A stretch of 64,000 nucleotides of DNA, from positions 158,056 to 222,055 of IMG/VR virus record IMGVR_UViG_3300027747_002221. One strand, written 5' to 3'. The notes below the pieces were generated by a model. It was given only the letters and a program-made list of their open reading frames with translations, made no database searches and had not been told where the DNA came from. How positions within the stretch are numbered: the stretch's first letter is position 1; the number at the start of each line of letters is the position of its first letter. Of this stretch, positions 1,960 to 45,748 are shown piece after piece. The translations under genes and the position numbers were made by a program.

Positions 1960-1988
1960 ATTATAACACCTTTTGGCAAACTTGTCAA
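1960..1988 (-). promoter_or_regulatory. Sigma70-type early promoter (perfect consensus)
   Basis: TTGACA-17 nt-TATAAT; ATG follows 6 nt after the -10 box. Confidence 0.85.
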
Positions 1989-3242: not shown

Positions 3243-3271
3243 ATTATATAGTCTTTTGTATTAGTTGTCAA
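3243..3271 (-). promoter_or_regulatory. Sigma70-type early promoter (perfect consensus)
   Basis: TTGACA-17 nt-TATAAT; the -35 box overlaps the stop codon of the upstream ORF. Confidence 0.85.
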
Positions 3272-4438: not shown

Positions 4439-4744
4439 TTATTTGAATAAAATCAAAGCCATTAAAACTGCCTGTGCTATAAAACCTACACCTATAGTAA
4501 TTATATTGAGTGCATCTTTAAGTACAACTGCTCTTGTGAATAATAAAACCAATCCTGCCCACATCATTAACACCACATCAAGGCTGGGTGGTTTATCACT
4601 TAGTCCTGTAAGTAATGCTAGTAATGAAGGAAGTGTTGCGCAATGTATTACTATTACTGCCAGCCAACCCATAGTGTCGGCAGAAATTTTATATAGATGC
4701 TCATTTAAAAAATTTCTAACAGCATTGATGTTAAAGAAGTTCAT
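4439..4744 (-). CDS. Multi-pass membrane protein
   Basis: 101 aa with about three hydrophobic segments; coupled to the hydrolase gene. Confidence 0.7.
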   Translation of the reverse strand: MNFFNINAVRNFLNEHLYKISADTMGWLAVIVIHCATLPSLLALLTGLSDKPPSLDVVLMMWAGLVLLFTRAVVLKDALNIITIGVGFIAQAVLMALILFK

Positions 4745-5319
4745 GTTCTTTCTCCGTAAAAGATGTGTCTACCGATCTGTTCTATCTTTGGTTTTTTCCA
4801 ATTTGGATTTACATAATCCGCGTGATAATATAATGCGTTATTTAGAGAAGGTAATCTAAAATTCTCTAATAGAACTTTCTTTGCTACCAATTCACTTTCT
4901 TCCCATAGGGGTTTGTATATTGGTCTGATTTTGTGTGTATTCTCACAATACCAACTAAATTGACAAACTACCTTTGCATAAAAGATGTTTTTCTGATAAA
5001 CAACTTCGCATACTGAATTCGCAAACTTTCCAGAATTTACTCTGTTCATAGTTACTTGTGCCACGCCTACCTTGCCTTCAAACGGTTCGGATGCCGCTTC
5101 CCAATATATGTTTCTAGTTAGGCAATCCAATTCTTTCATTCTTGTGGATGCACTAATATAGTCGGGTGGCCATGATGATTGAGTTTCTTTGAGGTTGCCT
5201 AATTTGACTTTACATGTAATTGCCACGGCGGACACTACAAGTGCAAATCCTATTATTTTAAAGAATTTCGCGGCAAAATCAACAATGGTTGCACTGTTGG
5301 TTTTTAAACTAATATCCAT
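4741..5319 (-). CDS. Cell wall hydrolase, SleB/Hydrolase_2 family
   Basis: CLTRNIYWEAASEPFEGKVGVAQVTMNRV, CQFSW, ALYYHADYVNPNW, IGRHIFY; N-terminal TM anchor. Confidence 0.9.
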   Translation of the reverse strand: MDISLKTNSATIVDFAAKFFKIIGFALVVSAVAITCKVKLGNLKETQSSWPPDYISASTRMKELDCLTRNIYWEAASEPFEGKVGVAQVTMNRVNSGKFANSVCEVVYQKNIFYAKVVCQFSWYCENTHKIRPIYKPLWEESELVAKKVLLENFRLPSLNNALYYHADYVNPNWKKPKIEQIGRHIFYGERT

Positions 5320-5403
5320 TTTTTCTCCTATTTGGATCCCCTCTCAAAAACTGAGACAAAGAGTGCATAGGGCACTATTTTTCTAAGGGATTTATTTGGT
5401 CAC
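5320..5403 (-). ncRNA. Candidate structured 5' leader (cis-regulatory RNA) of the hydrolase gene
   Basis: Three stems (AUCCCU/GGGGAU, AGUGC/GCACU, UCUCA/UGAGA); loop CCUAU is complementary to AUAGG overlapping the SD. Confidence 0.4.
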
Positions 5404-5409
5404 AGGATA

Positions 5410-5438
5410 ATTATATAGGACTTGACTAGGTTTGTCAA
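5410..5438 (-). promoter_or_regulatory. Sigma70-type promoter (perfect consensus)
   Basis: TTGACA-17 nt-TATAAT. Confidence 0.85.
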
Positions 5439-5440
5439 GC

Positions 5441-5463
5441 GACCCGGACAACTAATCCGGGTC
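5441..5463. terminator. GC-rich hairpin, possible terminator or processing site
   Basis: GACCCGGA-7 nt-TCCGGGTC just after the 5481 stop; no U-tract on the minus strand. Confidence 0.35.
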
Positions 5464-5480
5464 TCTGCTAATCCGTAAGA

Positions 5481-5876
5481 TTAAGCTTGTGTTTCTAATT
5501 TTGGCACAGTAACTGCTGTCCAATTTAATATGGATTCATCCCATGTATAGAATGTTCCTTCTGTTTCTGTTGTTGGCATAACTGCCTCAGGTTGTGCAAC
5601 AGGCGGCTGCCAATAGCATGTGTTCTCATCCAAAATCCAGCTTGCAAAAGGTTGAGGTGCATAAAATGCATCTCTGCCTGCATCATATACATAACCAATG
5701 CCTGCGTAGTTTTTACGCAAAGGAGTGCCACCGTTGCGGTGTGTACCACCTTGGGTATTGTAACTTGTTTGAACCCAAGTGCCGGGGTCTCCTACAGCAC
5801 CTGTGTCAATAAAATCTTGATCAGCAACAATAACTTGTGTTACTGTTCCGTTTTCTACTTTAGCAAAATGTCCCAT
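5481..5876 (-). CDS. Conserved aquatic-phage protein (WVQTSYN / RKNYAGIGY family), function unknown
   Basis: MGHFAKV...WVQTSYN...LRKNYAGIGYVYDAGRDAFYAPQPFASWILDENTCYWQPP. Confidence 0.8.
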   Translation of the reverse strand: MGHFAKVENGTVTQVIVADQDFIDTGAVGDPGTWVQTSYNTQGGTHRNGGTPLRKNYAGIGYVYDAGRDAFYAPQPFASWILDENTCYWQPPVAQPEAVMPTTETEGTFYTWDESILNWTAVTVPKLETQA

Positions 5877-5925
5877 TTTTTCTCCTAAAAATTTACCATT
5901 GTTGGTAATTGCTACATTGTTTATT

Positions 5926-5933
5926 TATTTATA
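5926..5933 (-). promoter_or_regulatory. T4-type late promoter
   Basis: TATAAATA 50 nt upstream of ATG 5876. Confidence 0.7.
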
Positions 5934-32457: not shown

Positions 32458-33480
32458 TTAGCACCTTTTCCATTCTGTAAATTTCATTTTAGCTTCCAAA
32501 CCTGAAAATATATTTTTTGCTACAATTTTGGCAGCATCAATACCATTTTCAACCATTTCATTTATGTCCTTTTCTTCAATGTTCTGAGGCCATATAACCA
32601 CATTATAATGCCGTTCTATAACCTTGTCAAGCACTCGGACAACATCCTTATTCCTCGGTTGGTTATCAATAATCATAACCAATTTATCTTTTGGCAAATC
32701 TAATAATTCCATTTTACCGAAAGATGTACCACCTACTGCGATTGCATTTGGTAAAAACAAACTATCCAATGGACCCTCAGTTACATAAATTGGTTTGTTT
32801 TTATCAACCTCATTCATTCCAAATATCAAGGCATCGTCCTCTTTAATTTTAATAACCAAATATCTTAAGGATTCTCCTCGCAATCCTCTGCAAGTTACTC
32901 CTGAGAGTTGACCAATATTATTATAAAAAGGAATAACTAACCTAGGTTCTTCTGTTGTTATTTTGTCTTTATATTTATCAGAAAGTTGCACGATGTGCTT
33001 TATGTTGGAAATAAAGTACAAACGGTTGAACATTGCCTTTGGAATTTTTCTTTTAAGACAGAACTGAACTGCTTCATTGTCTTCGGGTAAAGTATCAAGC
33101 CTATCCAATATTTTATCTAATAATGTCTCTTCCTTCTTCTCAAAAACAGGCTCTTCCTTTCTAAATTTGTCCTCAATCTTTTGATGTGGCTTGTTCATTG
33201 GCAAGCCTTCATTATATCGTTCCATTACATATTGGTTATACTGAAAACTATCTAGTTGTTTTAGGAATGAACCAAAGTGCATGGAAACACTACAATTATG
33301 ACACTTATAATACAAATCATTTTTAGCAACATAAAAATAACCACGTGTTTTACTTTGTTTTTTTGATGAGTCTCCGCAAAGAATACATCTGCAGTTGTAA
33401 AGGCGTTCGCTCTTTTGTTTGAACAGAGGCAAGCGGTTACTTATTAGTTTGAGATATTTAAGATCAGTGAATAAAGACAA
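32458..33480 (-). CDS. DNA primase, T4 gp61-like
   Basis: Zn finger CRCILCGDS...CHNC; TOPRIM YVTEGPLDSLF, DNQPRN, KDINEM. Confidence 0.92.
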   Translation of the reverse strand: MSLFTDLKYLKLISNRLPLFKQKSERLYNCRCILCGDSSKKQSKTRGYFYVAKNDLYYKCHNCSVSMHFGSFLKQLDSFQYNQYVMERYNEGLPMNKPHQKIEDKFRKEEPVFEKKEETLLDKILDRLDTLPEDNEAVQFCLKRKIPKAMFNRLYFISNIKHIVQLSDKYKDKITTEEPRLVIPFYNNIGQLSGVTCRGLRGESLRYLVIKIKEDDALIFGMNEVDKNKPIYVTEGPLDSLFLPNAIAVGGTSFGKMELLDLPKDKLVMIIDNQPRNKDVVRVLDKVIERHYNVVIWPQNIEEKDINEMVENGIDAAKIVAKNIFSGLEAKMKFTEWKRC

Positions 33481-33504: not shown

Positions 33505-33533
33505 ATTATAATATAATTTTAGGGAGAAGTCAA
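33505..33533 (-). promoter_or_regulatory. Sigma70-type promoter for primase
   Basis: TTGACT-17 nt-TATAAT. Confidence 0.8.
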
Positions 33534-38065: not shown

Positions 38066-41000
38066 TTATAATAGAGATAACAGAAACGGATGTATCTGTT
38101 CCTGCACAATTGCGTTAATTTGTCCATTGGCCGAAATTGTTAAATTTTGTCCAACAGTTATATTACTATTTATTTGTCCGTTAGGCAGAACTTCAGTATT
38201 TTTTCCACCAAGATATGTTCCTGTGCCATTTAATGTTGGTAGCTCTCTTATTTCTACAGTTACACCTGTTCTTGGAGGAGTTGTAAATCTTAATAATCCG
38301 TTGTTTACGGAGTAATCTATTCCTGGAACTTGGGCTACGCCGTTTTCAAATACTAAAATACTCGAATCTGTAAAATTATTACTAATAAGTGTAGTATTTG
38401 CTACGCTATTACCGTAAAATAATCTACTGTTAAAATCTTTAGCTAAAACTTGAGCTACATCTAATATTCTAACATCTATATCCGCATTTGTTGCAGGGGC
38501 ACCACTTAAAGTAATTACATTGCCGCTTAGAGTATATGCATTAGATAATTGTGTAACACCATTAATAATAACAGTTACATAGTTATTATTTACAGGAGTA
38601 ACAGGAAGATTCAAAGTTATTACTTGAGCATTACCCCTAAATGTAGCAATGTATGGTTTAAATACTGCCCCAGGAGCCATTGCTGCATATACTCTGGCAT
38701 TTGAGAAGTATAGGTTTGCACCACCTTCAGCTAAATTAGCAGTTGTAAGTCCAGCTAATGATACTGTACCTGCTGAAGTATTGGATCTAATCTGACCATT
38801 TGCCGCAATTACGATAGTTGCATCTGTAGATAACGCAGATATTACTCTTGAATTAGTATAGTAAAGATTAGATCCTTCAGCAACATTTGATGTTGTTAAG
38901 TATGGTGTTAATACAGATACAACACGAGCATTAGTATAATATAAATTAGATGCAGATTCAATTACGTTTGCTGTATACAATCCTAACCAGCTATTGGCTT
39001 GAATATTATTAGCAGATATCAAATTGGCGCCGGTCATAGAACCGCCGGTGCCTGAACCAAAGAATGCGGTGTTTGCTACTACACTACCTATAGTGGCATT
39101 GCCAATAACAATATTACCTGTTAAAGCTGATAATACTCTTGTATTAGTATAGTAAAGGTTTGAGCCTTCTGTTAAATTAGCAGTTGTAAAATTACTAATA
39201 CTTAAAACAGTATTTGCCACATTGGATGTTGATGCAAATCCCGATGTTGCGGATGCTGTTGCATTAATTTGTCCGTTGGCTTGAATCTGTATACCTGATC
39301 CTGCCAATGTTGGCAATAATGCAATTACATTAGCAAATACTCTAGCGTTGGTAAAATATAAATTACCTGTCGTTTCTATTACATTGGCTGTATAAAGCCC
39401 CAACCAACTATTAGCTTGTATATTTGTGGCAGATATCAAATTGGCGCCGGTCATAGAACCGCCGGTGCCTGAACCAAAGAATGCCGTATTTGCTACAATA
39501 TTATTAGCAGATATCAAATTGGCGCCTGTTACAGAACCACCGACCCCTGAACCAAAGAATGCCGTATTTGCTACTACACTACCTATAGTGGCATTGCCTA
39601 TGGTAATATTACCTGTTAATGCTGATAGAACACGAGTATTAGTATAATAAAGATTAGAACCTTCTGCTAAATTAGCAGTAGTAAAATTACTTAAAGTTAA
39701 AACAGTATTTGCCACATTGGATGTTGATGCAAATCCCGATGTTGCTGATGCTGTTGCATTAATTTGACCATTAGCCTGAATCTGTATACCAGAGCCAGCT
39801 AAGCTAGGTAATAATGCAATTACATTTGAGTATACTCTAGCATTGGTAAAATATAGGTTTGTATTTTCAATTACGTTAGATGTATACAATCCTAACCAAC
39901 TATTAGCTTGTATATTTGTGGCAGATATTAAATTTGCACCTGTTACAGAACCGCCGGTGCCAGAACCAAAGGATGCTGTATTTGCTATTACATTACCTGT
40001 GGTAACATTAACTGCAGTAATATTATTAGTTTGAATATTATTTGCGGATATTAAGTTTGCCCCAGCTATTATTCCGCCTGTGCCTGTTCCAAATAGTAAT
40101 GTGCCTGTTGCTATTACATTGCCCGCTGTAACATTTCCTGAGGTAACATAGCTATTGGATACAGAAGTGCCTGTAACTAAATTACCTACTACAAGATTAC
40201 CTGTTAATGCAGATAATACTCTGGCGTTAGTGTAGTAAAGATTCGAACCCTCAGAAACATTGGATGTTGTTAAGAATGGTGCAAGTGTTGCTAGAGATAA
40301 TGATTGGGCGTTTGCGTTAATTTGTCCGTTGGCTTGAATCTGTATACCTGATCCTGCCAATGTTGGCAATAATGCGATTACATTGGAATAAACTCTAGCA
40401 TTGGTAAAATAAAGGTTTATATTTTCGATTACATTAGATGTATACAATCCTAACCAACTATTAGCTTGTATATTATTTGCGGATATTAAGTTTGCACCTG
40501 TTACAGAACCGCCGGTGCCTGAACCAAAGAATGCAATGCCAGTTGCTATTACATTACCTGCGGTTACATTACCTGTGGTAACATAACTATTAGATACAGA
40601 AGTGCCTGTAACTAGATTACCAATAGTAACATTACCTGTTAACGCTGATATAACACGCGCATTTGTATAATAAAGGTTCGATCCTTCAGATACATTTGAT
40701 GTTGTTAAGAATGGTGCAAGAGTTGCCAGGGATATTGATTGAGCGCTTGCATTAATTTGACCATTGGCTTGAATCTGTATACCTGATCCAGCTAATGAGG
40801 GTAATAGTGCGATTACATTTGAATAAACTCTTGCATTTGTAAAATATAAATTACCTGCTGTTTCTATTACGTTTGCTGTATATAAACCTAACCAAGTAAT
40901 ACCTTGTATATTATTTGCGGATAACAAATTAGCGCCAACTATAGAACCGCCGGCACCTGAACCAAAGACTGCCCCAGTTGCTATCACATTACCTATAGTG

Positions 41001-44000
41001 GCGTTGCCTATAGCAACGTTGCCCGCCAATGCAGCTATAACATTTGAATAAACTCTTGCATTTGTAAAATATAAATTACCTGCTGTTTCTATTACGTTTG
41101 CTGTATATAAACCTAACCAAGTAATACCTTGTATATTATTTGCGGATATTAAGTTTGCCCCTGCTATTACTCCGCCGGCACCTGAACCAAATAATAGTGT
41201 GCCTGTTGCTATTACATTGCCTGCGGTTACATTACCTGCAGTAACATAGCTATTGGATACAGAAGTGCCTGTAACCAGATTACCAATAGTAACATTACCT
41301 GTTAACGCCGACAATACTCTAGCGTTTGTATAGTAAAGATTGGATCCCTCTGATACATTTGAGGTACTTGTTATCGAAACACCAGAAGCAGTGGCATTGA
41401 TTTGACCATTAGCCTGAATCTGTATACCTGATCCAGCTAATGAGGGTAATAGTGCAATTACATTGGAATAAACTCTAGCGTTGGTAAAATAAAGGTTTGT
41501 ATTTTCAATTACATTTGCTGAATACAGGCCTAACCAATTAATACTCTGTATATTATTTGCGGATATTAAGTTTGCACCTGTTACAGAACCGCCGGTGCCT
41601 GCACCAAAGACTGCAATACCGGTTGCTATTACATTGCCTGCTGTAACATTTCCTGAGGTAACATAACTATTAGATACAGATGTGCCTGTAACTAAATTAC
41701 CTACTACAAGATTGCCTGATAGTGCTGATAAAACACGAGCATTAGTATAATAAAGATTAGACCCCTCTGATACATTAGATGTGGTTAAGAATGGTGCAAG
41801 TGTTGCTAGAGATAATGATTGGGCATTTGCATTAATTTGACCATTGGCTTGAATCTGTATACCTGATCCAGCTAATGAGGGTAATAGTGCGATTACATTT
41901 GAATATACTCTAGCGTTTGTGAAGTATTGATTAATCCCTTCAATTACATTAGATGTATACAACCCTAACCAATTAATACCTTGTATATTATTAGCAGATA
42001 TCAAATTAGCGCCAACTATAGAACCGCCGCCACCTGAACCAAATAATACTGTACCGGTTGCTATTATATTACCAGCTGTAACATTTCCGGCGGTAACATA
42101 ACTATTGGATACAGAAGTGCCTGTAACCAGATTGCCTATGGTAACATTGCCGGTCAATGCTGACAATACCCTAGCGTTTGTATAGTAAAGATTAGAACCC
42201 TCAGATACATTTGAGGTACTTGTTATCGAAGCACCAGAAGCAGTGGCATTGATTTGACCATTGGCTTGAATCTGTATGCCTGATCCTGCCAATGTTGGCA
42301 ATAATGCGATTACATTTGAATATACTCTAGCGTTTGTGAAGTATTGATTAATCCCTTCAATTACGTTAGACGTGTATAAACCTATCCAATTAATACCTTG
42401 TATATTATTTGCGGATAATAAATTGGCGCCTGTTATGGAATTACCTGTAGCAGACCCGAATACTATATTAGTAGCTGATATTAAGTTTAGACCCGTTAAA
42501 GATCCACCTGATGCAGATCCTATTATTAACGTATTTGCTATTACAACATTGCCTGCAGTAACATTACCTGCGGTAACATAACTATTAGATACTGAAGTAC
42601 CGGTAACAAGATTACCAATGGCAACATTGCCTGTTAAAGCTGATAATACTCTAGCATTGGTATAATATAGATTGGAATTGGATTCTGCAACATTGGCAGT
42701 TGTAAGGAATTGAGATACCGCTCCAATAGATATAGTTTGTGTATTAGCATTAATCTGACCATTGGCGGCAATGGTAATATTTTGACCAGCTAAGCTAGGT
42801 AAGAATGCAATAACATTACTATTAACACGCACATTAGTATAGTATAAATTAATACCTTCAGCTAAATTAGCAGTTGTAAAGTTACTTAAAGTACCTACGG
42901 TACCTGTTACATTGCCAAAGAATGTTGTTGCTGCAATGTTAGCTAATCTAAATGAGGCGTGTGCTGTATCAATAAAGATATTAGCATCAGGTTCTGGAGA
43001 ATAATTATCAAATACTTTGAATGTACCGTTATCGGATGCGTCTCTGAAGAAACCACCATGTCGATATACACCATCATTATAATTAAATGCAAAACCAATA
43101 TCAGGATTCGAAACAGTAGAATTCGAATTCAAGTAAATCATATTATCCGAAACGGATATATTATTTGCACCGTATGTAGTTACACCACCATATACTGTTA
43201 AGTTGTTTGTAATACTAACATTCTGGAATGTTACGTCAGCAGTTGCTGCTACATTTTGTCCAATTGATATTGCACCTGTAACAGAATTATAACTTACACC
43301 AGTTCCGCTGCTTAAAGTAGATCTTACTCTAGAATTGGTATAGTAAAGATTATTTAATTCTGTTACATTGGCAGTTGTTAGGTATGGTTGTACGAAAGAA
43401 TTTACTCTTGTATTTGTATAATATAATGCGCTACTTGATTCTATTACATTGGCTGTATAAAGTCCTATCCAAGAATTACCTTGGATGAATGTTGCAGATA
43501 ATAAATTGGCACCAGTAAAGGAACCACCAGTGCCTGCACCAAATGTAGTACTACCCGATACACTAATATTGCCTACAGTTGCATTACCGATAGCAATATT
43601 ACCTGCCAACAACGCTGTAACGTTAGAGTAAACGCGATTATTAGTGTAATATAGATTGGAACCTTCGGCAACATTTGAAGTAGTTAAATACGGTGCTAAT
43701 ACTGATATAACACGAGCATTTGTATAATATAAATTTTGATTGCCTTCAGCTACATTATTTGTAGTTATATTGGCAATAGTTGCATTAAGATTTGCAAATT
43801 CAAGACTTACGTTTGCACTAATTCTACCATTGGCTTCAATTATAATACTTTGCCCGGCAGTAAATGCGGATCTTACTCTTGAATTAGTATAATATAAATT
43901 GGCATTTGATTCTGCTAAATTTGCAGTTGTAAAGTTACTTAAAGATAATACAGAATTAGCTACATTTGACCTATCTGAAGTATTGGCATGGTCTGCTTGA

Positions 44001-45748
44001 TATGCAAACAATGCGGTGTTTGCAGCTGTTCCGGAATCTATAGTACCAGATACAAATTTTGTACCATTCCAAATTAATATACCGTTGGTTGTAATGCCTG
44101 TTATATCTACATCTGCAAATACATTAACACTTTGCTGCTCTAAATTAGCAGTAACTCTCGCATTAGTAAAGTAAAGATTTGAACTTGATTCTAATACGTT
44201 GGCAGTAGTTAGATATGATGTAAGAGCAGATATTACTCTTGCATTAGTAAAGTATAGATTAGTACCTTCTATTAAATTGGATGTAGTAAAATTAGATAAT
44301 GAACTTACTGTACCTGTTATATTACCTACGAATGATCTGGTAACTACAAGATTACCTGTAGTAATATTTGAGGCCGTAAGAGTAACTAAGCTTAAACCTG
44401 TCTGATTATTTCCTGATAATTTTTGTCCACCTACATATAATGACTCTGCACTTAGGTAAAAGTCTTTCCATTGTTTATCTGCAGAACCAAAATTAAATCT
44501 GGTGTCTTCGGAAGGAATAATATTACCGGCAATAATTATATTGCCAGATGAGGAAATTAATTTACCTGTTTGAATATTGTCTGAAGATACTAAATTGGCG
44601 CCTGTCAAAGAACCACCCGCACCAGCACCAAATGTAGTACTACCCGATACACTAATATTGCCCACACTTGCATTACCTAGTAAGATATTACCTGCAAGTG
44701 TAGTTATAACATTAGAATAAACGCGAGCATTAGTATAATATAGATTGGAACCTTCAGCAACATTTGAAGTAGTTAGATAAGGCAAAACTACGGATATTAC
44801 TCGGGCATTTGTATAATATAATGCGCTACTTGATTCTATTACATTGGCTGTATAAAGTCCCAACCAAGAATTGCCCCGAATAAAGGCACCAGATAATAAA
44901 TTAGCTCCTGTTATAGAACCACCAAAACCAGAACCAAATAAAGCACTATCTGCTATTACATTGCCAGCGGTAACATTGCCTGAGGTAACATAACTATTAG
45001 ATATAGAAGTGCCTGTAACTAGATTACCTATTGTAACATTACCTGTTAAAGCCGTCAATACTCTTGCATTAGTATAGTATAAATTACTACCTTCAGCAAC
45101 ATTTGAAGTAGTTAGATAAGGTAATACTACGGATATTACGCGAGCATTAGTATAATATAAATTATTTAATTCTGTTACGTTAGCTGTCGTTAAATCTGTT
45201 ACATTAGCCTTTGCTGCTAAATTACCCTGAATAGCAGCGTAAACTCTCGCATTAGTATAATATAAATTAGAACTTGATTCTAATATATTAGCAGTAGTCA
45301 AATAAGGAGTAACTGCAGATATAACGCGAGCGTTGGTGTAGTATAAATTAGAACTTGATTCTAATATATTAGCAGTAGTCAAATAAGGAGTTACTGCAGA
45401 TATAACGCGAGCGTTGGTGTAGTATAAATTGATACCTTCAACCAAATTAGCAGTTGTAAAATTGTTTAAGGTTAAAACAGTATTAGCAATGTTTGCGGTT
45501 AAGGCAACATTTGCTATTAAGGCAACATTTGCTATTCCGGAAGTATTTGCAAAGTATGGTACACTGGATCCTGATGCAGGATCTACCCAAATTCTATTAC
45601 CATTAATATCGGATGAAAGTACGTATCCAGAAACGGCAGGCAGACCTAAGTCTGGTTCTGTTTCTGATAATCCAATAAATTGGTATCGGTCAGCGCTTAC
45701 ATTTGCGCTAGTAACTTTTGCAATTCTGCCCGAGATTAGTTTAGTCAT
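38066..45748 (-). CDS. Giant repetitive fibre-like protein (2560 aa)
   Basis: About 34 NLY(Y/F)TNARV repeats by manual count; C-terminus IHPFLLSLL. Confidence 0.8.
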   Translation of the reverse strand: MTKLISGRIAKVTSANVSADRYQFIGLSETEPDLGLPAVSGYVLSSDINGNRIWVDPASGSSVPYFANTSGIANVALIANVALTANIANTVLTLNNFTTANLVEGINLYYTNARVISAVTPYLTTANILESSSNLYYTNARVISAVTPYLTTANILESSSNLYYTNARVYAAIQGNLAAKANVTDLTTANVTELNNLYYTNARVISVVLPYLTTSNVAEGSNLYYTNARVLTALTGNVTIGNLVTGTSISNSYVTSGNVTAGNVIADSALFGSGFGGSITGANLLSGAFIRGNSWLGLYTANVIESSSALYYTNARVISVVLPYLTTSNVAEGSNLYYTNARVYSNVITTLAGNILLGNASVGNISVSGSTTFGAGAGGSLTGANLVSSDNIQTGKLISSSGNIIIAGNIIPSEDTRFNFGSADKQWKDFYLSAESLYVGGQKLSGNNQTGLSLVTLTASNITTGNLVVTRSFVGNITGTVSSLSNFTTSNLIEGTNLYFTNARVISALTSYLTTANVLESSSNLYFTNARVTANLEQQSVNVFADVDITGITTNGILIWNGTKFVSGTIDSGTAANTALFAYQADHANTSDRSNVANSVLSLSNFTTANLAESNANLYYTNSRVRSAFTAGQSIIIEANGRISANVSLEFANLNATIANITTNNVAEGNQNLYYTNARVISVLAPYLTTSNVAEGSNLYYTNNRVYSNVTALLAGNIAIGNATVGNISVSGSTTFGAGTGGSFTGANLLSATFIQGNSWIGLYTANVIESSSALYYTNTRVNSFVQPYLTTANVTELNNLYYTNSRVRSTLSSGTGVSYNSVTGAISIGQNVAATADVTFQNVSITNNLTVYGGVTTYGANNISVSDNMIYLNSNSTVSNPDIGFAFNYNDGVYRHGGFFRDASDNGTFKVFDNYSPEPDANIFIDTAHASFRLANIAATTFFGNVTGTVGTLSNFTTANLAEGINLYYTNVRVNSNVIAFLPSLAGQNITIAANGQINANTQTISIGAVSQFLTTANVAESNSNLYYTNARVLSALTGNVAIGNLVTGTSVSNSYVTAGNVTAGNVVIANTLIIGSASGGSLTGLNLISATNIVFGSATGNSITGANLLSANNIQGINWIGLYTSNVIEGINQYFTNARVYSNVIALLPTLAGSGIQIQANGQINATASGASITSTSNVSEGSNLYYTNARVLSALTGNVTIGNLVTGTSVSNSYVTAGNVTAGNIIATGTVLFGSGGGGSIVGANLISANNIQGINWLGLYTSNVIEGINQYFTNARVYSNVIALLPSLAGSGIQIQANGQINANAQSLSLATLAPFLTTSNVSEGSNLYYTNARVLSALSGNLVVGNLVTGTSVSNSYVTSGNVTAGNVIATGIAVFGAGTGGSVTGANLISANNIQSINWLGLYSANVIENTNLYFTNARVYSNVIALLPSLAGSGIQIQANGQINATASGVSITSTSNVSEGSNLYYTNARVLSALTGNVTIGNLVTGTSVSNSYVTAGNVTAGNVIATGTLLFGSGAGGVIAGANLISANNIQGITWLGLYTANVIETAGNLYFTNARVYSNVIAALAGNVAIGNATIGNVIATGAVFGSGAGGSIVGANLLSANNIQGITWLGLYTANVIETAGNLYFTNARVYSNVIALLPSLAGSGIQIQANGQINASAQSISLATLAPFLTTSNVSEGSNLYYTNARVISALTGNVTIGNLVTGTSVSNSYVTTGNVTAGNVIATGIAFFGSGTGGSVTGANLISANNIQANSWLGLYTSNVIENINLYFTNARVYSNVIALLPTLAGSGIQIQANGQINANAQSLSLATLAPFLTTSNVSEGSNLYYTNARVLSALTGNLVVGNLVTGTSVSNSYVTSGNVTAGNVIATGTLLFGTGTGGIIAGANLISANNIQTNNITAVNVTTGNVIANTASFGSGTGGSVTGANLISATNIQANSWLGLYTSNVIENTNLYFTNARVYSNVIALLPSLAGSGIQIQANGQINATASATSGFASTSNVANTVLTLSNFTTANLAEGSNLYYTNTRVLSALTGNITIGNATIGSVVANTAFFGSGVGGSVTGANLISANNIVANTAFFGSGTGGSMTGANLISATNIQANSWLGLYTANVIETTGNLYFTNARVFANVIALLPTLAGSGIQIQANGQINATASATSGFASTSNVANTVLSISNFTTANLTEGSNLYYTNTRVLSALTGNIVIGNATIGSVVANTAFFGSGTGGSMTGANLISANNIQANSWLGLYTANVIESASNLYYTNARVVSVLTPYLTTSNVAEGSNLYYTNSRVISALSTDATIVIAANGQIRSNTSAGTVSLAGLTTANLAEGGANLYFSNARVYAAMAPGAVFKPYIATFRGNAQVITLNLPVTPVNNNYVTVIINGVTQLSNAYTLSGNVITLSGAPATNADIDVRILDVAQVLAKDFNSRLFYGNSVANTTLISNNFTDSSILVFENGVAQVPGIDYSVNNGLLRFTTPPRTGVTVEIRELPTLNGTGTYLGGKNTEVLPNGQINSNITVGQNLTISANGQINAIVQEQIHPFLLSLL
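45262..45423. repeat. 81 bp in-frame tandem duplication
   Basis: Two copies, one mismatch, each encoding ISAVTPYLTTANILESSSNLYYTNARV. Confidence 0.85.

What the first reader, a model, noticed from the sequence alone, without database searches (positions are those of the whole stretch)
5320..5403. Riboswitch-like leader of the cell wall hydrolase, with a pseudoknot able to mask the SD
Seen on the minus strand between promoter and ATG (about 84 nt): P1 AUCCCU/GGGGAU enclosing an A-rich junction AGAAAAAU, P2 AGUGC-CCUAU-GCACU and P3 UCUCA-GUUUU-UGAGA. The P2 loop CCUAU is exactly complementary to AUAGG, which overlaps the SD (UAGGAG). Established: SD-occluding pseudoknots are a common riboswitch expression platform, and wall hydrolases are often under RNA control. 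I do not recognise c-di-GMP or c-di-AMP consensus here. Inference: an undescribed cis-regulatory RNA timing a lytic enzyme that sits behind an early-type promoter.
Basis: partly seen in the sequence, partly recalled or inferred. Interest (0 to 1): 0.62.

Follow-up and report, generated by a model that had tools for sequence, protein, structure and literature searches.

The report
Conserved phage lysis-gene leader, no riboswitch
The 84-base stretch is a real 5' leader, kept by selection, in front of a cell-wall hydrolase gene of an uncultured freshwater T4-like phage. Only its outer stem is conserved; the proposed riboswitch core and the pseudoknot that would hide the ribosome-binding site are not, so it is an ordinary structured leader of unknown detailed role.

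Summary
The fold is no more stable than shuffled sequence (z -0.8 and -0.1). A 5-nt loop/SD complement arises in 4.5% of shuffles, and Rfam finds nothing.

I collected 28 distinct homologous leaders from lake metagenomes. The leader is under purifying selection: 69% identity against 42% at four-fold synonymous sites. Only a long-range lower stem is universal. It pairs a C-run plus A-tract with a U-tract plus G-run, and it beats shuffles in 27 of 28 leaders. P2 is 32% paired outside the window's own shallow clade. P3 is intact in 3 of 15 such leaders and the pseudoknot in 0 of 15. A 96%-identical relative already breaks the pseudoknot.

The SD is predicted open and is the phage's generic UAGGAGA site. 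The phage is T4-like (Gp23, RegA, TATAAATA late promoters).

Verdict: a clade-specific structured 5' UTR displaying a conserved pyrimidine-rich 18-mer upstream of an open RBS. It is most likely a docking, stability or processing element, not a ligand sensor. Interest is modest.

The parts
5410..5438 (-). Perfect sigma-70 promoter, TTGACA-17-TATAAT. The predicted start is G5403.
   Evidence: 12/12 match. It is one of about 35 such promoters in the 222-kb genome, all on this strand. It is conserved in all 28 homologous loci.
5320..5403 (-).
   Evidence: Leader identity is 0.69 against 0.42 at four-fold synonymous sites of the gene behind it. There is no Rfam match.
5392..5403 (-). Single-stranded 5' tail, GUGA followed by an A-rich run. 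GUGA is invariant.
   Evidence: Alignments; unpaired in the folds.
5378..5391 (-).
   Evidence: An outer helix between this segment and 5336..5351 is in the MFE of all 20 leaders folded. Duplex energy beats shuffles in 27 of 28. The C/U variation lies opposite an invariant G (CG 12, UG 8).
5336..5351 (-).
   Evidence: In silico removal of the G-run lowers predicted SD accessibility in most leaders.
5362..5376 (-). It is specific to the window's clade.
   Evidence: Present in the window. 32% of cells are paired and 0 of 15 are intact outside the window clade.
5342..5356 (-). It is present in some lineages only.
   Evidence: Intact in 3 of 15 outside the clade. There is one compensatory C-G to U-A change, in the L106 group. 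Rod-type relatives pair the same UCUCAG with an upstream ACUGA instead.
5349..5366 (-). Pyrimidine-rich 18-mer (GCACUCUUUGUCUCAGUU), the most conserved block of the leader. It lies inside the domain.
   Evidence: Conservation line. It is unique in the genome and has no antisense partner. In IMG/VR it is found as a leader only before this hydrolase. Its complementarity to the RBS is no better than that of shuffled versions.
5317..5331 (-). Open A-rich ribosome-binding site, AUAGGAGAAAAAAUG.
   Evidence: Predicted mostly unpaired. The same UAGGAGA-type site stands before at least 10 other genes, and the 15-mer is identical at the gene starting at 5876.
4741..5319 (-). 192-aa Hydrolase_2 / SleB-CwlJ-like cell-wall hydrolase with an N-terminal hydrophobic segment.
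   Evidence: PF07486, E 3.5e-24. phrog_938 endolysin. Cultured-phage relatives are annotated as endolysin. The N-terminal hydrophobic stretch FFKIIGFALVVSAVAITC is read; calling it a signal-anchor is inference.
4439..4744 (-). 101-aa protein with three hydrophobic segments whose start overlaps the hydrolase stop (ATGA). Holin-like by position and shape only.
   Evidence: sequence. No Pfam or PHROG hit. A 100-103-aa gene follows the hydrolase in most related loci for which called genes were listed.
5421..5439 (-). Hairpin/palindrome cTTGAC-N7-GTCAAg spanning the -35 element and the spacer.
   Evidence: It is kept in all promoter variants. In L190 and L204 a different sequence stands at the same place (GACTTCT-N4-AGAAGTC). 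L189 and L133 have G-U wobbles.
5441..5463 (-). GC-rich hairpin after the upstream gene (GACCCGG-N9-CCGGGTC), terminator-like. Several relatives have a U-run after it.

Best explanation
The stretch is the 5' UTR of the first gene of a lysis-type cassette. The cassette holds a membrane-anchored SleB-like hydrolase, then a small three-hydrophobic-segment protein. It sits at the border between the late structural module and an early-gene block of an uncultured freshwater T4-like myovirus.

Shown:
- It lies behind a consensus sigma-70 promoter.
- It is far longer than the leaders of the phage's other early-type promoters.
- It is under purifying selection.
- Its one universal structural feature is a long-range lower stem, pairing a C-run plus A-tract with a U-tract plus G-run. 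This stem closes an irregular domain of about 56 nt.
- The domain's interior folds in at least two different ways in different lineages: Y-shaped with P2 and P3 in the window, rod-shaped elsewhere. It always contains the same pyrimidine-rich 18-mer.
- The ribosome-binding site lies outside the domain, is the phage's generic strong site, and is predicted open.

Inferred:
- The domain is a constitutive cis element, not a ligand sensor.
- It presents the conserved 18-mer on a structurally maintained stem as a docking site for a trans-acting protein or RNase, that is, an operator, stability or processing determinant.
- At the same time it folds the C-run and the pyrimidine tract away from the purine-rich RBS, so the default state is 'translatable'.
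- Timing of the enzyme would then come from promoter use, from T4-type factors acting on the open A-rich start region (a RegA homologue is encoded), and from the membrane step, not from this RNA sensing a metabolite.
For: Promoter and leader length:
- Promoter and leader anatomy.
- The other early-type promoters have short leaders.

Selection:
- Leader identity 0.69 against 0.42 at four-fold sites, with protein identity 0.68, over 66 pairs of 12 lineages.

The lower stem is universal:
- It is in the MFE of all 20 leaders folded.
- Alignment-free duplex energy is -9 to -19 kcal/mol against about -5 for shuffles, P <= 0.04 in 27 of 28.
- C/U varies opposite an invariant G.

The interior is not conserved:
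-. Two architectures are seen.
- A sister lineage (L013, L014) keeps the promoter, 5' tail and RBS but replaces the domain with a 7-bp hairpin.

The SD is open and generic.

Removing the G-run in silico lets the C-run or the tract approach the SD in most leaders.

The 18-mer is unique in the genome and tied to this gene.

T4-like context:
- Gp23 E 3.6e-142; RegA E 4.7e-46.
- TATAAATA occurs 8 times, all on the coding strand, several directly before structural genes.
- T4 RegA sites are unstructured and A+U-rich, with a 5' poly(A) tract and the AUG (PMC3014915). The window's start region has that composition.
Against: - No trans factor is identified and no binding can be tested here.
- The lower stem has no clear double-sided covariation in its G-C core. 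Its support is conservation, energy and one-sided C/U changes.
- Overall folding energy is only weakly below shuffles (mean z -0.93).
- The stem starts about 12 nt from the predicted 5' end. By established knowledge of RNase E entry, that is too far for a classic 5'-terminal stabiliser hairpin.
- The in-silico insulation effect is small in the window's own clade (0.63 to 0.57 and 0.33).
- The transcription start is predicted, not mapped. The RNA-library data available were contigs only.
Confidence: 0.4

Rival explanations
1. A metabolite-sensing riboswitch formed by a P1/P2/P3 three-way junction, whose P2 loop (CCUAU) pairs with AUAGG in a pseudoknot to hide the SD.
For: - The helices and the exact 5-nt complement exist in the window.
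- The three-way junction is an MFE solution.
- The leader is conserved and is unknown to Rfam.
- The pseudoknot tolerates the CUUAU variant through a G-U pair in two close relatives.
Against: - P2 is 32% paired, and the pseudoknot is intact in 0 of 15 leaders outside the window clade.
- A relative whose hydrolase is 96% identical has loop CUCAU, with a central mismatch.
- Loop/SD pairing is at chance level in every lineage (P 0.10-0.98; 4.5% for exact Watson-Crick).
- There is no consensus fold.
- There is no conserved junction core. The junctions are A- and U-runs.
- AUAGG belongs to a generic RBS.
- Using all five loop bases with zero-length linkers is sterically strained for an H-type pseudoknot. 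This rests on established pseudoknot geometry and was not computed here.
- L013 and L014 lack the whole domain.
Confidence: 0.04
2. A leader attenuator or pause site. The A-tract, a variable hairpin and the U-rich conserved tract would form a weak intrinsic terminator that trims output from a consensus-strength promoter.
For: - The scan flags P2 plus CTTTGTCTCA as terminator-like.
- A-tract, hairpin, U-rich tract is the usual terminator layout.
- In about half of the lineages a hairpin of different sequence ends just before the U-rich tract (win, L005, L204, L011, L106, L133, L087). That would explain conserved tracts around a variable stem.
Against: - The stems are only 4-5 bp, roughly -3 to -5 kcal/mol by my hand estimate from nearest-neighbour rules (not a tool result).
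- The U-tract is interrupted by C and G.
- Five rod-type lineages have no hairpin next to the tract.
- Three terminator-like sites in 1.8 kb against 1.3 +/- 1.2 in shuffles is not an excess.
- No alternative antiterminator pairing was found.
Confidence: 0.15
3. The conserved 18-mer and the GUGA at the start are DNA-level signals, such as an operator for a roadblock repressor or a site for a phage transcription factor. The RNA folds would then be incidental.
For: - The block is conserved in primary sequence whatever its pairing partner.
- The promoter region carries another conserved dyad.
Against: - The block is not a dyad and is not repeated anywhere else in the 222-kb genome.
- The C/U-opposite-G and A/G-opposite-U variation in the stems fits RNA pairing on the sense strand.
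- The long-range complementarity is significant in 27 of 28 leaders.
Confidence: 0.1
4. T4 gene e-type control. Long read-through transcripts from the upstream late gene would mask the RBS, and transcripts from the proximal promoter would be translatable (or the reverse).
For: - The phage is T4-like.
- T4 e, soc, 49 and I-TevI use this logic (PMC3014915).
- An RNA-library contig runs unbroken from the upstream gene through the leader (5321..5890).
- SD accessibility falls in the longer RNAs.
Against: - The fall is no greater than with shuffled upstream sequence.
- The candidate upstream anti-SD (UCCU) is not conserved.
- There is no TATAAATA late promoter between 5319 and 5480.
- The contig may be DNA carry-over and shows no single transcript.
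Confidence: 0.03

Closest known systems
Inhibitory leader structures of T4 genes e (lysozyme), soc, 49 and I-TevI
   Same: A T4-type phage, a wall-degrading enzyme gene reachable from more than one promoter class, and a structured RNA just upstream of the start (PMC3014915).
   Different: In T4 the SD and/or AUG sit inside the helix, and late promoters lie within the helix-coding DNA. Here the SD is outside the domain and predicted open. No late promoter lies in the leader. Read-through masking is at chance level.
T4 protein-RNA translational operators (RegA sites; gp43 hairpin operator; gp32 5' pseudoknot plus an unstructured A/U-rich region)
   Same: A RegA homologue is encoded. The start region is A-rich, unstructured and includes a poly(A) tract before the AUG, as described for RegA sites. 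A stem presenting a conserved sequence upstream of an open RBS resembles the operator layout.
   Different: No binding protein is identified for the domain. RegA sites need no upstream hairpin. There is no sequence similarity to the T4 operators. RegB was not detected, though that search has no positive control.
SD-sequestering pseudoknot riboswitches (for example preQ1-II, SAM-II and SAM-V classes; from general knowledge)
   Same: In the window alone, a hairpin loop is complementary to bases overlapping the SD.
   Different: Those classes have invariant ligand-pocket nucleotides and covarying helices across wide phylogeny. Here the loop, its stem and the pairing are lost within a shallow clade, and there is no Rfam hit.
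ydaO/c-di-AMP and c-di-GMP riboswitches upstream of wall hydrolase genes
   Same: The same kind of downstream gene (a cell-wall hydrolase).
   Different: No match to any Rfam model, even at E <= 10. The leader is much shorter than ydaO-type aptamers.
T7-type RNase III processing hairpins between early genes (from general knowledge)
   Same: An irregular stem-loop of about 50-60 nt with internal loops, in an intergenic region just upstream of an RBS. The rod-type relatives look most like this.
   Different: The window's own fold is as good as a three-way junction. No cleavage data exist. T4-type phages are not known to rely on RNase III sites.

Membership tests
Riboswitch (any class) | Helices of the aptamer supported by conservation and covariation across homologues | tested here: not met
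   Only the outer stem is kept. P2 is 32% paired and P3 64% paired outside the window clade. The RNAalifold consensus is -0.42 kcal/mol with 4 pairs.
Riboswitch (any class) | Invariant unpaired core nucleotides forming a ligand pocket | tested here: not met
   The junctions are A- or U-runs of variable length. The one conserved block (5366..5349) is paired differently in different lineages.
Riboswitch (any class) | Expression platform: alternative pairing that hides the SD or forms a terminator | tested here: not met
   The SD is predicted mostly open. Loop/SD and block/SD complementarity are at chance level. There is no convincing terminator.
Riboswitch (any class) | Ligand binding | not testable with these tools
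   Needs in-line probing or SHAPE with candidate ligands.
Known Rfam families, including c-di-GMP-I/II, ydaO/c-di-AMP and preQ1 | Covariance-model score at or above the gathering threshold | tested here: not met
   The best overlapping hit is STnc550 at 10.2 bits (gathering score 48), E = 10. There are no gathering-level hits in 14 related loci.
T4 gene e-type RBS-masking leader | SD or AUG inside a helix in the longer transcript | tested here: not met
   Masking in read-through RNA equals that with shuffled upstream sequence.
T4 gene e-type RBS-masking leader | Late promoter (TATAAATA) inside the helix-coding DNA | tested here: not met
   There is none between 5319 and 5480. The nearest is 5926..5933, before the upstream gene.
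RegA translational operator | Unstructured A+U-rich site with a 5' poly(A) tract, overlapping or just 5' of the AUG | tested here: met
   GGAGAAAAAAUGGAUAUU is predicted open. The criteria are quoted from PMC3014915. This is a loose criterion that many sites meet.
RegA translational operator | The phage encodes RegA, and RegA binds the site | tested here: inconclusive
   The RegA gene is present (PF01818, 153 bits). Binding is not testable here.
RNA thermometer (FourU/ROSE type) | SD paired with a U-rich or UYGCU strand in a hairpin of marginal stability | tested here: not met
   The SD is unpaired in the predicted ensembles.
Intrinsic terminator / leader attenuator | Stable GC-rich stem followed directly by a U-run, conserved in homologues | tested here: inconclusive
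   There is a weak 5-bp stem plus an interrupted U-tract. The hairpin is present next to the tract in about half of the lineages.

The most novel reading that the evidence does not exclude
The C-run/G-run-closed domain with its invariant pyrimidine-rich 18-mer is a new, clade-specific RNA operator. A phage or host protein (or an RNase) would bind it to time or limit translation of a lysis cassette that is transcribed from an early promoter. More broadly, the different long, conserved leaders found before the homologous hydrolase genes of sister clades would be analogous devices, so post-transcriptional control of lysis genes would be a general trait of these freshwater T4-like phages. One of those sister-clade leaders ends in UGAGUAAGUAAAACUACC-AUG with no SD at all.
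Probability: 0.15. Interest if true: 0.55.

Novelty: new member of a known kind. Interest (0 to 1): 0.27.

Why it matters
If the domain is a regulatory operator, it would show how a T4-like phage can place a wall-degrading enzyme behind a strong host-type early promoter without killing the cell too soon. That bears on lysis timing in abundant uncultured lake phages.

As it stands, the result mainly clears a false lead. The attractive three-way junction and SD pseudoknot are features of one shallow clade and are at chance level, so the element should not be entered as a riboswitch candidate. What remains is a conserved, unannotated 5' UTR element with one well-supported stem. It is worth a reporter experiment but is not a surprise to specialists.

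Tried and rejected
1. Rfam at E <= 10 on the region, and at gathering level on 14 related loci: nothing.
2. Close relatives among cultured phages: none at the DNA level. Protein hits are at most 43% identical.
3. A scan of IMG/VR for the conserved 18-mer, to find the leader before other genes: only the known hydrolase loci plus chance coding hits.
4. It therefore gave the structure no extra support.
5. Averaging base-pair probabilities over the alignment: no column pair above 0.3 except a weak AUA/UAU hairpin around the SD. Indels blur the outer stem, so I switched to alignment-free tests.
6. 'Read-through RNA masks the SD': rejected by the shuffled-upstream control.
7. 'The conserved pyrimidine block is a selected anti-SD': rejected. 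The duplex with the RBS is no better than for shuffled blocks.
8. 'Some hairpin loop always complements the SD': rejected.
9. An antisense partner or a second copy of the block in the genome: none.
10. Leader peptide: the in-leader ATG is not conserved, and the GUG-initiated mini-frames vary from 2 to 17 codons (read).
11. MotA-box middle promoter or late promoter inside the leader: no convincing match by eye. AsiA was not detected, but that search had no positive control.
12. Mapping RNA ends from metatranscriptomes: only assembled contigs were on offer, which cannot show starts or ends.
13. A consensus fold for the sister-clade 'group B' leaders: a simple alignment plus alifold gave only partial helices, because several subfamilies are mixed. 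I did not pursue it.

Full report
**Where we are.** The window is the last 64 kb of a 222,055-bp IMG/VR virus record.
- The genome is T4-like. It encodes a Gp23-type major capsid protein (PF07068, E 3.6e-142) and a RegA translational repressor (PF01818, E 4.7e-46).
- The T4 late-promoter word TATAAATA occurs 8 times in the window, always on the coding (minus) strand, several times directly before structural genes.
- About 35 near-consensus sigma-70 promoters of one family (gcTTGACA ... AAAGGTGTTATAAT) drive short-leader early genes.
- Relatives come from lake metagenomes and lake metatranscriptomes.

**The gene.**
- ORF 4741..5319 (minus strand) is a 192-aa Hydrolase_2 / SleB-CwlJ-type wall hydrolase (PF07486, E 3.5e-24; phrog_938 'endolysin').
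- Cultured-phage relatives are annotated as endolysin.
- It has an N-terminal hydrophobic segment, read. Calling it a signal-anchor is inference.
- Its stop overlaps the start of a 101-aa protein with three hydrophobic segments. This protein is holin-like by position only and has no family hit. A metallophosphoesterase gene follows.
- Upstream lies a late-type gene (5481..5876) with its own TATAAATA at 5926..5933. So the cassette sits at the border of the late structural module and an early block.

| Element | Sequence | Coordinates (minus strand) |
|---|---|---|
| P1 | AUCCCU / GGGGAU | 5391..5386 with 5341..5336 |
| P2 | AGUGC-CCUAU-GCACU | 5376..5362 |
| P3 | UCUCA-GUUUU-UGAGA | 5356..5342 |
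| Pseudoknot partner | AUAGG | 5331..5327 |
| SD | AGGAG | 5329..5325 |
| Start codon | ATG | 5319 |

- The promoter is a 12/12 match at 5438..5410, and G5403 is 7 nt past the -10.
- The three-way junction is one MFE solution. A rod-like fold is the MFE when the RNA starts at G5403.
- The fold is not unusually stable: z = -0.78 and -0.12.
- An exact 5-nt complement of the SD region in a hairpin loop arises in 4.5% of shuffles.
- AUAGG belongs to the phage's standard RBS. UAGGAGA precedes at least 10 other genes, and the 15-mer TAGGAGAAAAAATGG is identical at the neighbouring gene.
- Rfam finds nothing.

**Homologous leaders.**
- Protein-guided scans of IMG/VR and JGI metagenomes, plus ten look-ups of encoding contigs, gave about 180 loci.
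- Leaders alignable to the window's ('group A') occur in 28 distinct versions. Their hydrolases are 64-97% identical to the window's.
- Across 12 lineages, leader identity is 0.69, four-fold synonymous sites of the adjacent gene are at 0.42, and the protein is at 0.68. The leader is therefore under purifying selection.
- The conserved parts are GUGA at the start, a C-run, an A-tract, the 18-mer GCACUCUUUGUCUCAGUU, a G-run, and AGGAGAAAA..AUG.

- On the 20-sequence alignment A1, 64% of cells pair against 61% after shuffling.
- RNAalifold returns no consensus (-0.42 kcal/mol).
- Split by clade, all helices are intact in the five members of the window's own shallow clade, except that L083 breaks the pseudoknot. 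L083's hydrolase is 96% identical and its loop is CUCAU.
- In the other 15 leaders:

| Helix | Cells paired | Leaders with the helix intact |
|---|---|---|
| P2 | 32% | 0 of 15 |
| Pseudoknot | 57% | 0 of 15 |
| P3 | 64% | 3 of 15 |
| P1, column by column | 57% | 0 of 15 (register shifts) |

- The pseudoknot figure of 57% comes mostly from the invariant SD bases.
- P3 shows one compensatory C-G to U-A change, in the L106 group.
- Alignment-free, the longest loop/SD pairing is at chance level in every lineage (P 0.10-0.98).

**What is conserved structurally.**
- Every one of the 20 leaders folded has an outer helix joining the C-run region to the G-run region.
- The duplex between nt 8-30 and the 27 nt before the SD scores -9 to -19 kcal/mol, against about -5 for shuffled 3' segments. 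P is at most 0.04 in 27 of 28 leaders.
- The variable position in the stem is C or U opposite an invariant G. This fits RNA pairing on the sense strand.
- Inside the domain two architectures occur. The Y type has P2 and P3 (window, L005, L006, L106). In the rod type the same UCUCAG pairs with an upstream ACUGA (L011, L088, L089, L133, L190).
- L013 and L014 keep the promoter, 5' tail and RBS but carry a 7-bp hairpin in place of the whole domain.

**The RBS.**
- It is predicted mostly open in promoter-initiated RNA.
- It is less open in read-through RNA, but no more so than with shuffled upstream sequence.
- The pyrimidine 18-mer looks anti-SD-like, but its duplex with the RBS is no better than that of shuffled versions.
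- Deleting the G-run in silico lets the C-run or the tract reach the SD in most leaders. The effect is weak in the window's clade.

**Interpretation.**
- The data fit a constitutive structured 5' UTR. A maintained lower stem presents a sequence-conserved 18-mer and keeps pyrimidine-rich segments off an open, generic RBS.
- The 18-mer is unique in the genome, has no antisense partner, and occurs as a leader only before this gene.
- I take it as a docking, stability or processing element for a trans factor (confidence about 0.4).
- Timing would then be supplied elsewhere: by promoter class, by RegA-type repression at the A-rich start (criteria in PMC3014915), and by the membrane step.

**Expression.**
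- Lake metatranscriptome assemblies hold pieces of the gene.
- In one run a 570-nt contig, 100% identical, runs from the upstream gene through the hairpins, promoter and leader to 5321.
- Contigs cannot show starts, strands or single transcripts, and DNA carry-over is possible.

**Novelty.** The element has no described family, but it belongs to a familiar kind, the structured phage mRNA leader. It is not a riboswitch candidate on present evidence.

Noticed in passing
window 5421..5439 (minus strand); related loci L005, L011, L106, L133, L189, L190, L204: A hairpin/palindrome, cTTGAC-N7-GTCAAg, spans the -35 element and the promoter spacer. It is kept in all 24 promoter variants.
- The flanking pair covaries (c/g, g/c, a/t).
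- L133 extends the stem to 11 bp.
- L189 and L133 have G-U wobbles, which pair only in sense-strand RNA.
- L190 and L204 carry a different sequence at the same place (GACTTCT-N4-AGAAGTC).
This looks like an RNA hairpin in read-through transcripts, perhaps a second terminator, rather than a protein operator. The N7 form is unique in the genome.
   Followed up: partly
L012, L015-L049, L095-L161 and others, the roughly 90 nt before the hydrolase ATG (for example L021:2410-2509): Most homologues at 56-68% identity ('group B', 77 distinct versions) carry a different, strongly conserved leader.
- It has two or three hairpins and ends in the nearly invariant UGAGUAAGUAAAACUACC-AUG.
- That ending has stop codons in all three frames and no Shine-Dalgarno sequence.
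- In L051, L061, L058 and L070 a related word (UAAAACUAC) is followed by a normal AGGAG site.
There is no Rfam match. A simple alifold gave only partial helices. It may be a separate RNA or promoter motif worth its own study.
   Followed up: partly
L013:2444-2509 and L014: A sister lineage (hydrolase 64% identical) keeps the same promoter type, GUGAGUAAA 5' tail and AAAUAGGAGAAA ribosome site. It replaces the 56-nt domain with a 7-bp hairpin (AAGAAUC-ACUCC-GAUUCUU).
   Followed up: partly
window 5316..5330 and 5873..5887 (minus strand): The 15-mer TAGGAGAAAAAATGG, covering the SD, spacer, start codon and next base, is identical at the hydrolase gene and at the gene just upstream. UAGGAGA is the favoured SD of at least 10 further genes.
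   Followed up: yes
window 5468..5485 and 5441..5463 (minus strand): Two further conserved hairpins lie between the upstream gene and the promoter. One includes that gene's stop codon (CTTAATC...GATTAG). The other is GC-rich and terminator-like, and several relatives have a U-run after it.
   Followed up: partly
window 1960..1988, 3243..3271, 32602..32630, 33505..33533 (minus strand); genome-wide list: There is a family of about 35 near-consensus sigma-70 promoters with a shared extended motif (AAAGGTGTTATAAT). All are on the minus strand, mostly with 15-30-nt leaders. The hydrolase promoter lacks the shared spacer motif and has CTATATAATTA instead.
   Followed up: partly
window 5926, 12110, 13763, 24090, 34219, 51027, 60312, 63810 (minus strand): All 8 copies of the T4 late-promoter word TATAAATA lie on the coding strand and none on the other, several directly before structural genes. 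The total number is not above chance. The strand bias and the positions are what stand out.
   Followed up: partly
window 39052, 39469, 39547, 40519, 40957 (plus-strand coordinates), inside ORF 38066..45748: A 16-mer (CTGAACCAAAGAATGC, with a variant) with similar flanks recurs five times inside the 2,560-aa ORF. This indicates internal repeats in that giant protein.
   Followed up: no
genome G000:C1:46474-46830 (outside the window): A RegA translational-repressor homologue is encoded (153 bits). AsiA and RegB models found nothing, but those searches had no positive control.
   Followed up: partly
window 5321..5890: A lake metatranscriptome assembly holds a 570-nt contig, 100% identical, that spans the upstream gene, both hairpins, the promoter and the whole leader. 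It stops 2 nt before the ATG. It may be read-through RNA or DNA carry-over.
   Followed up: no
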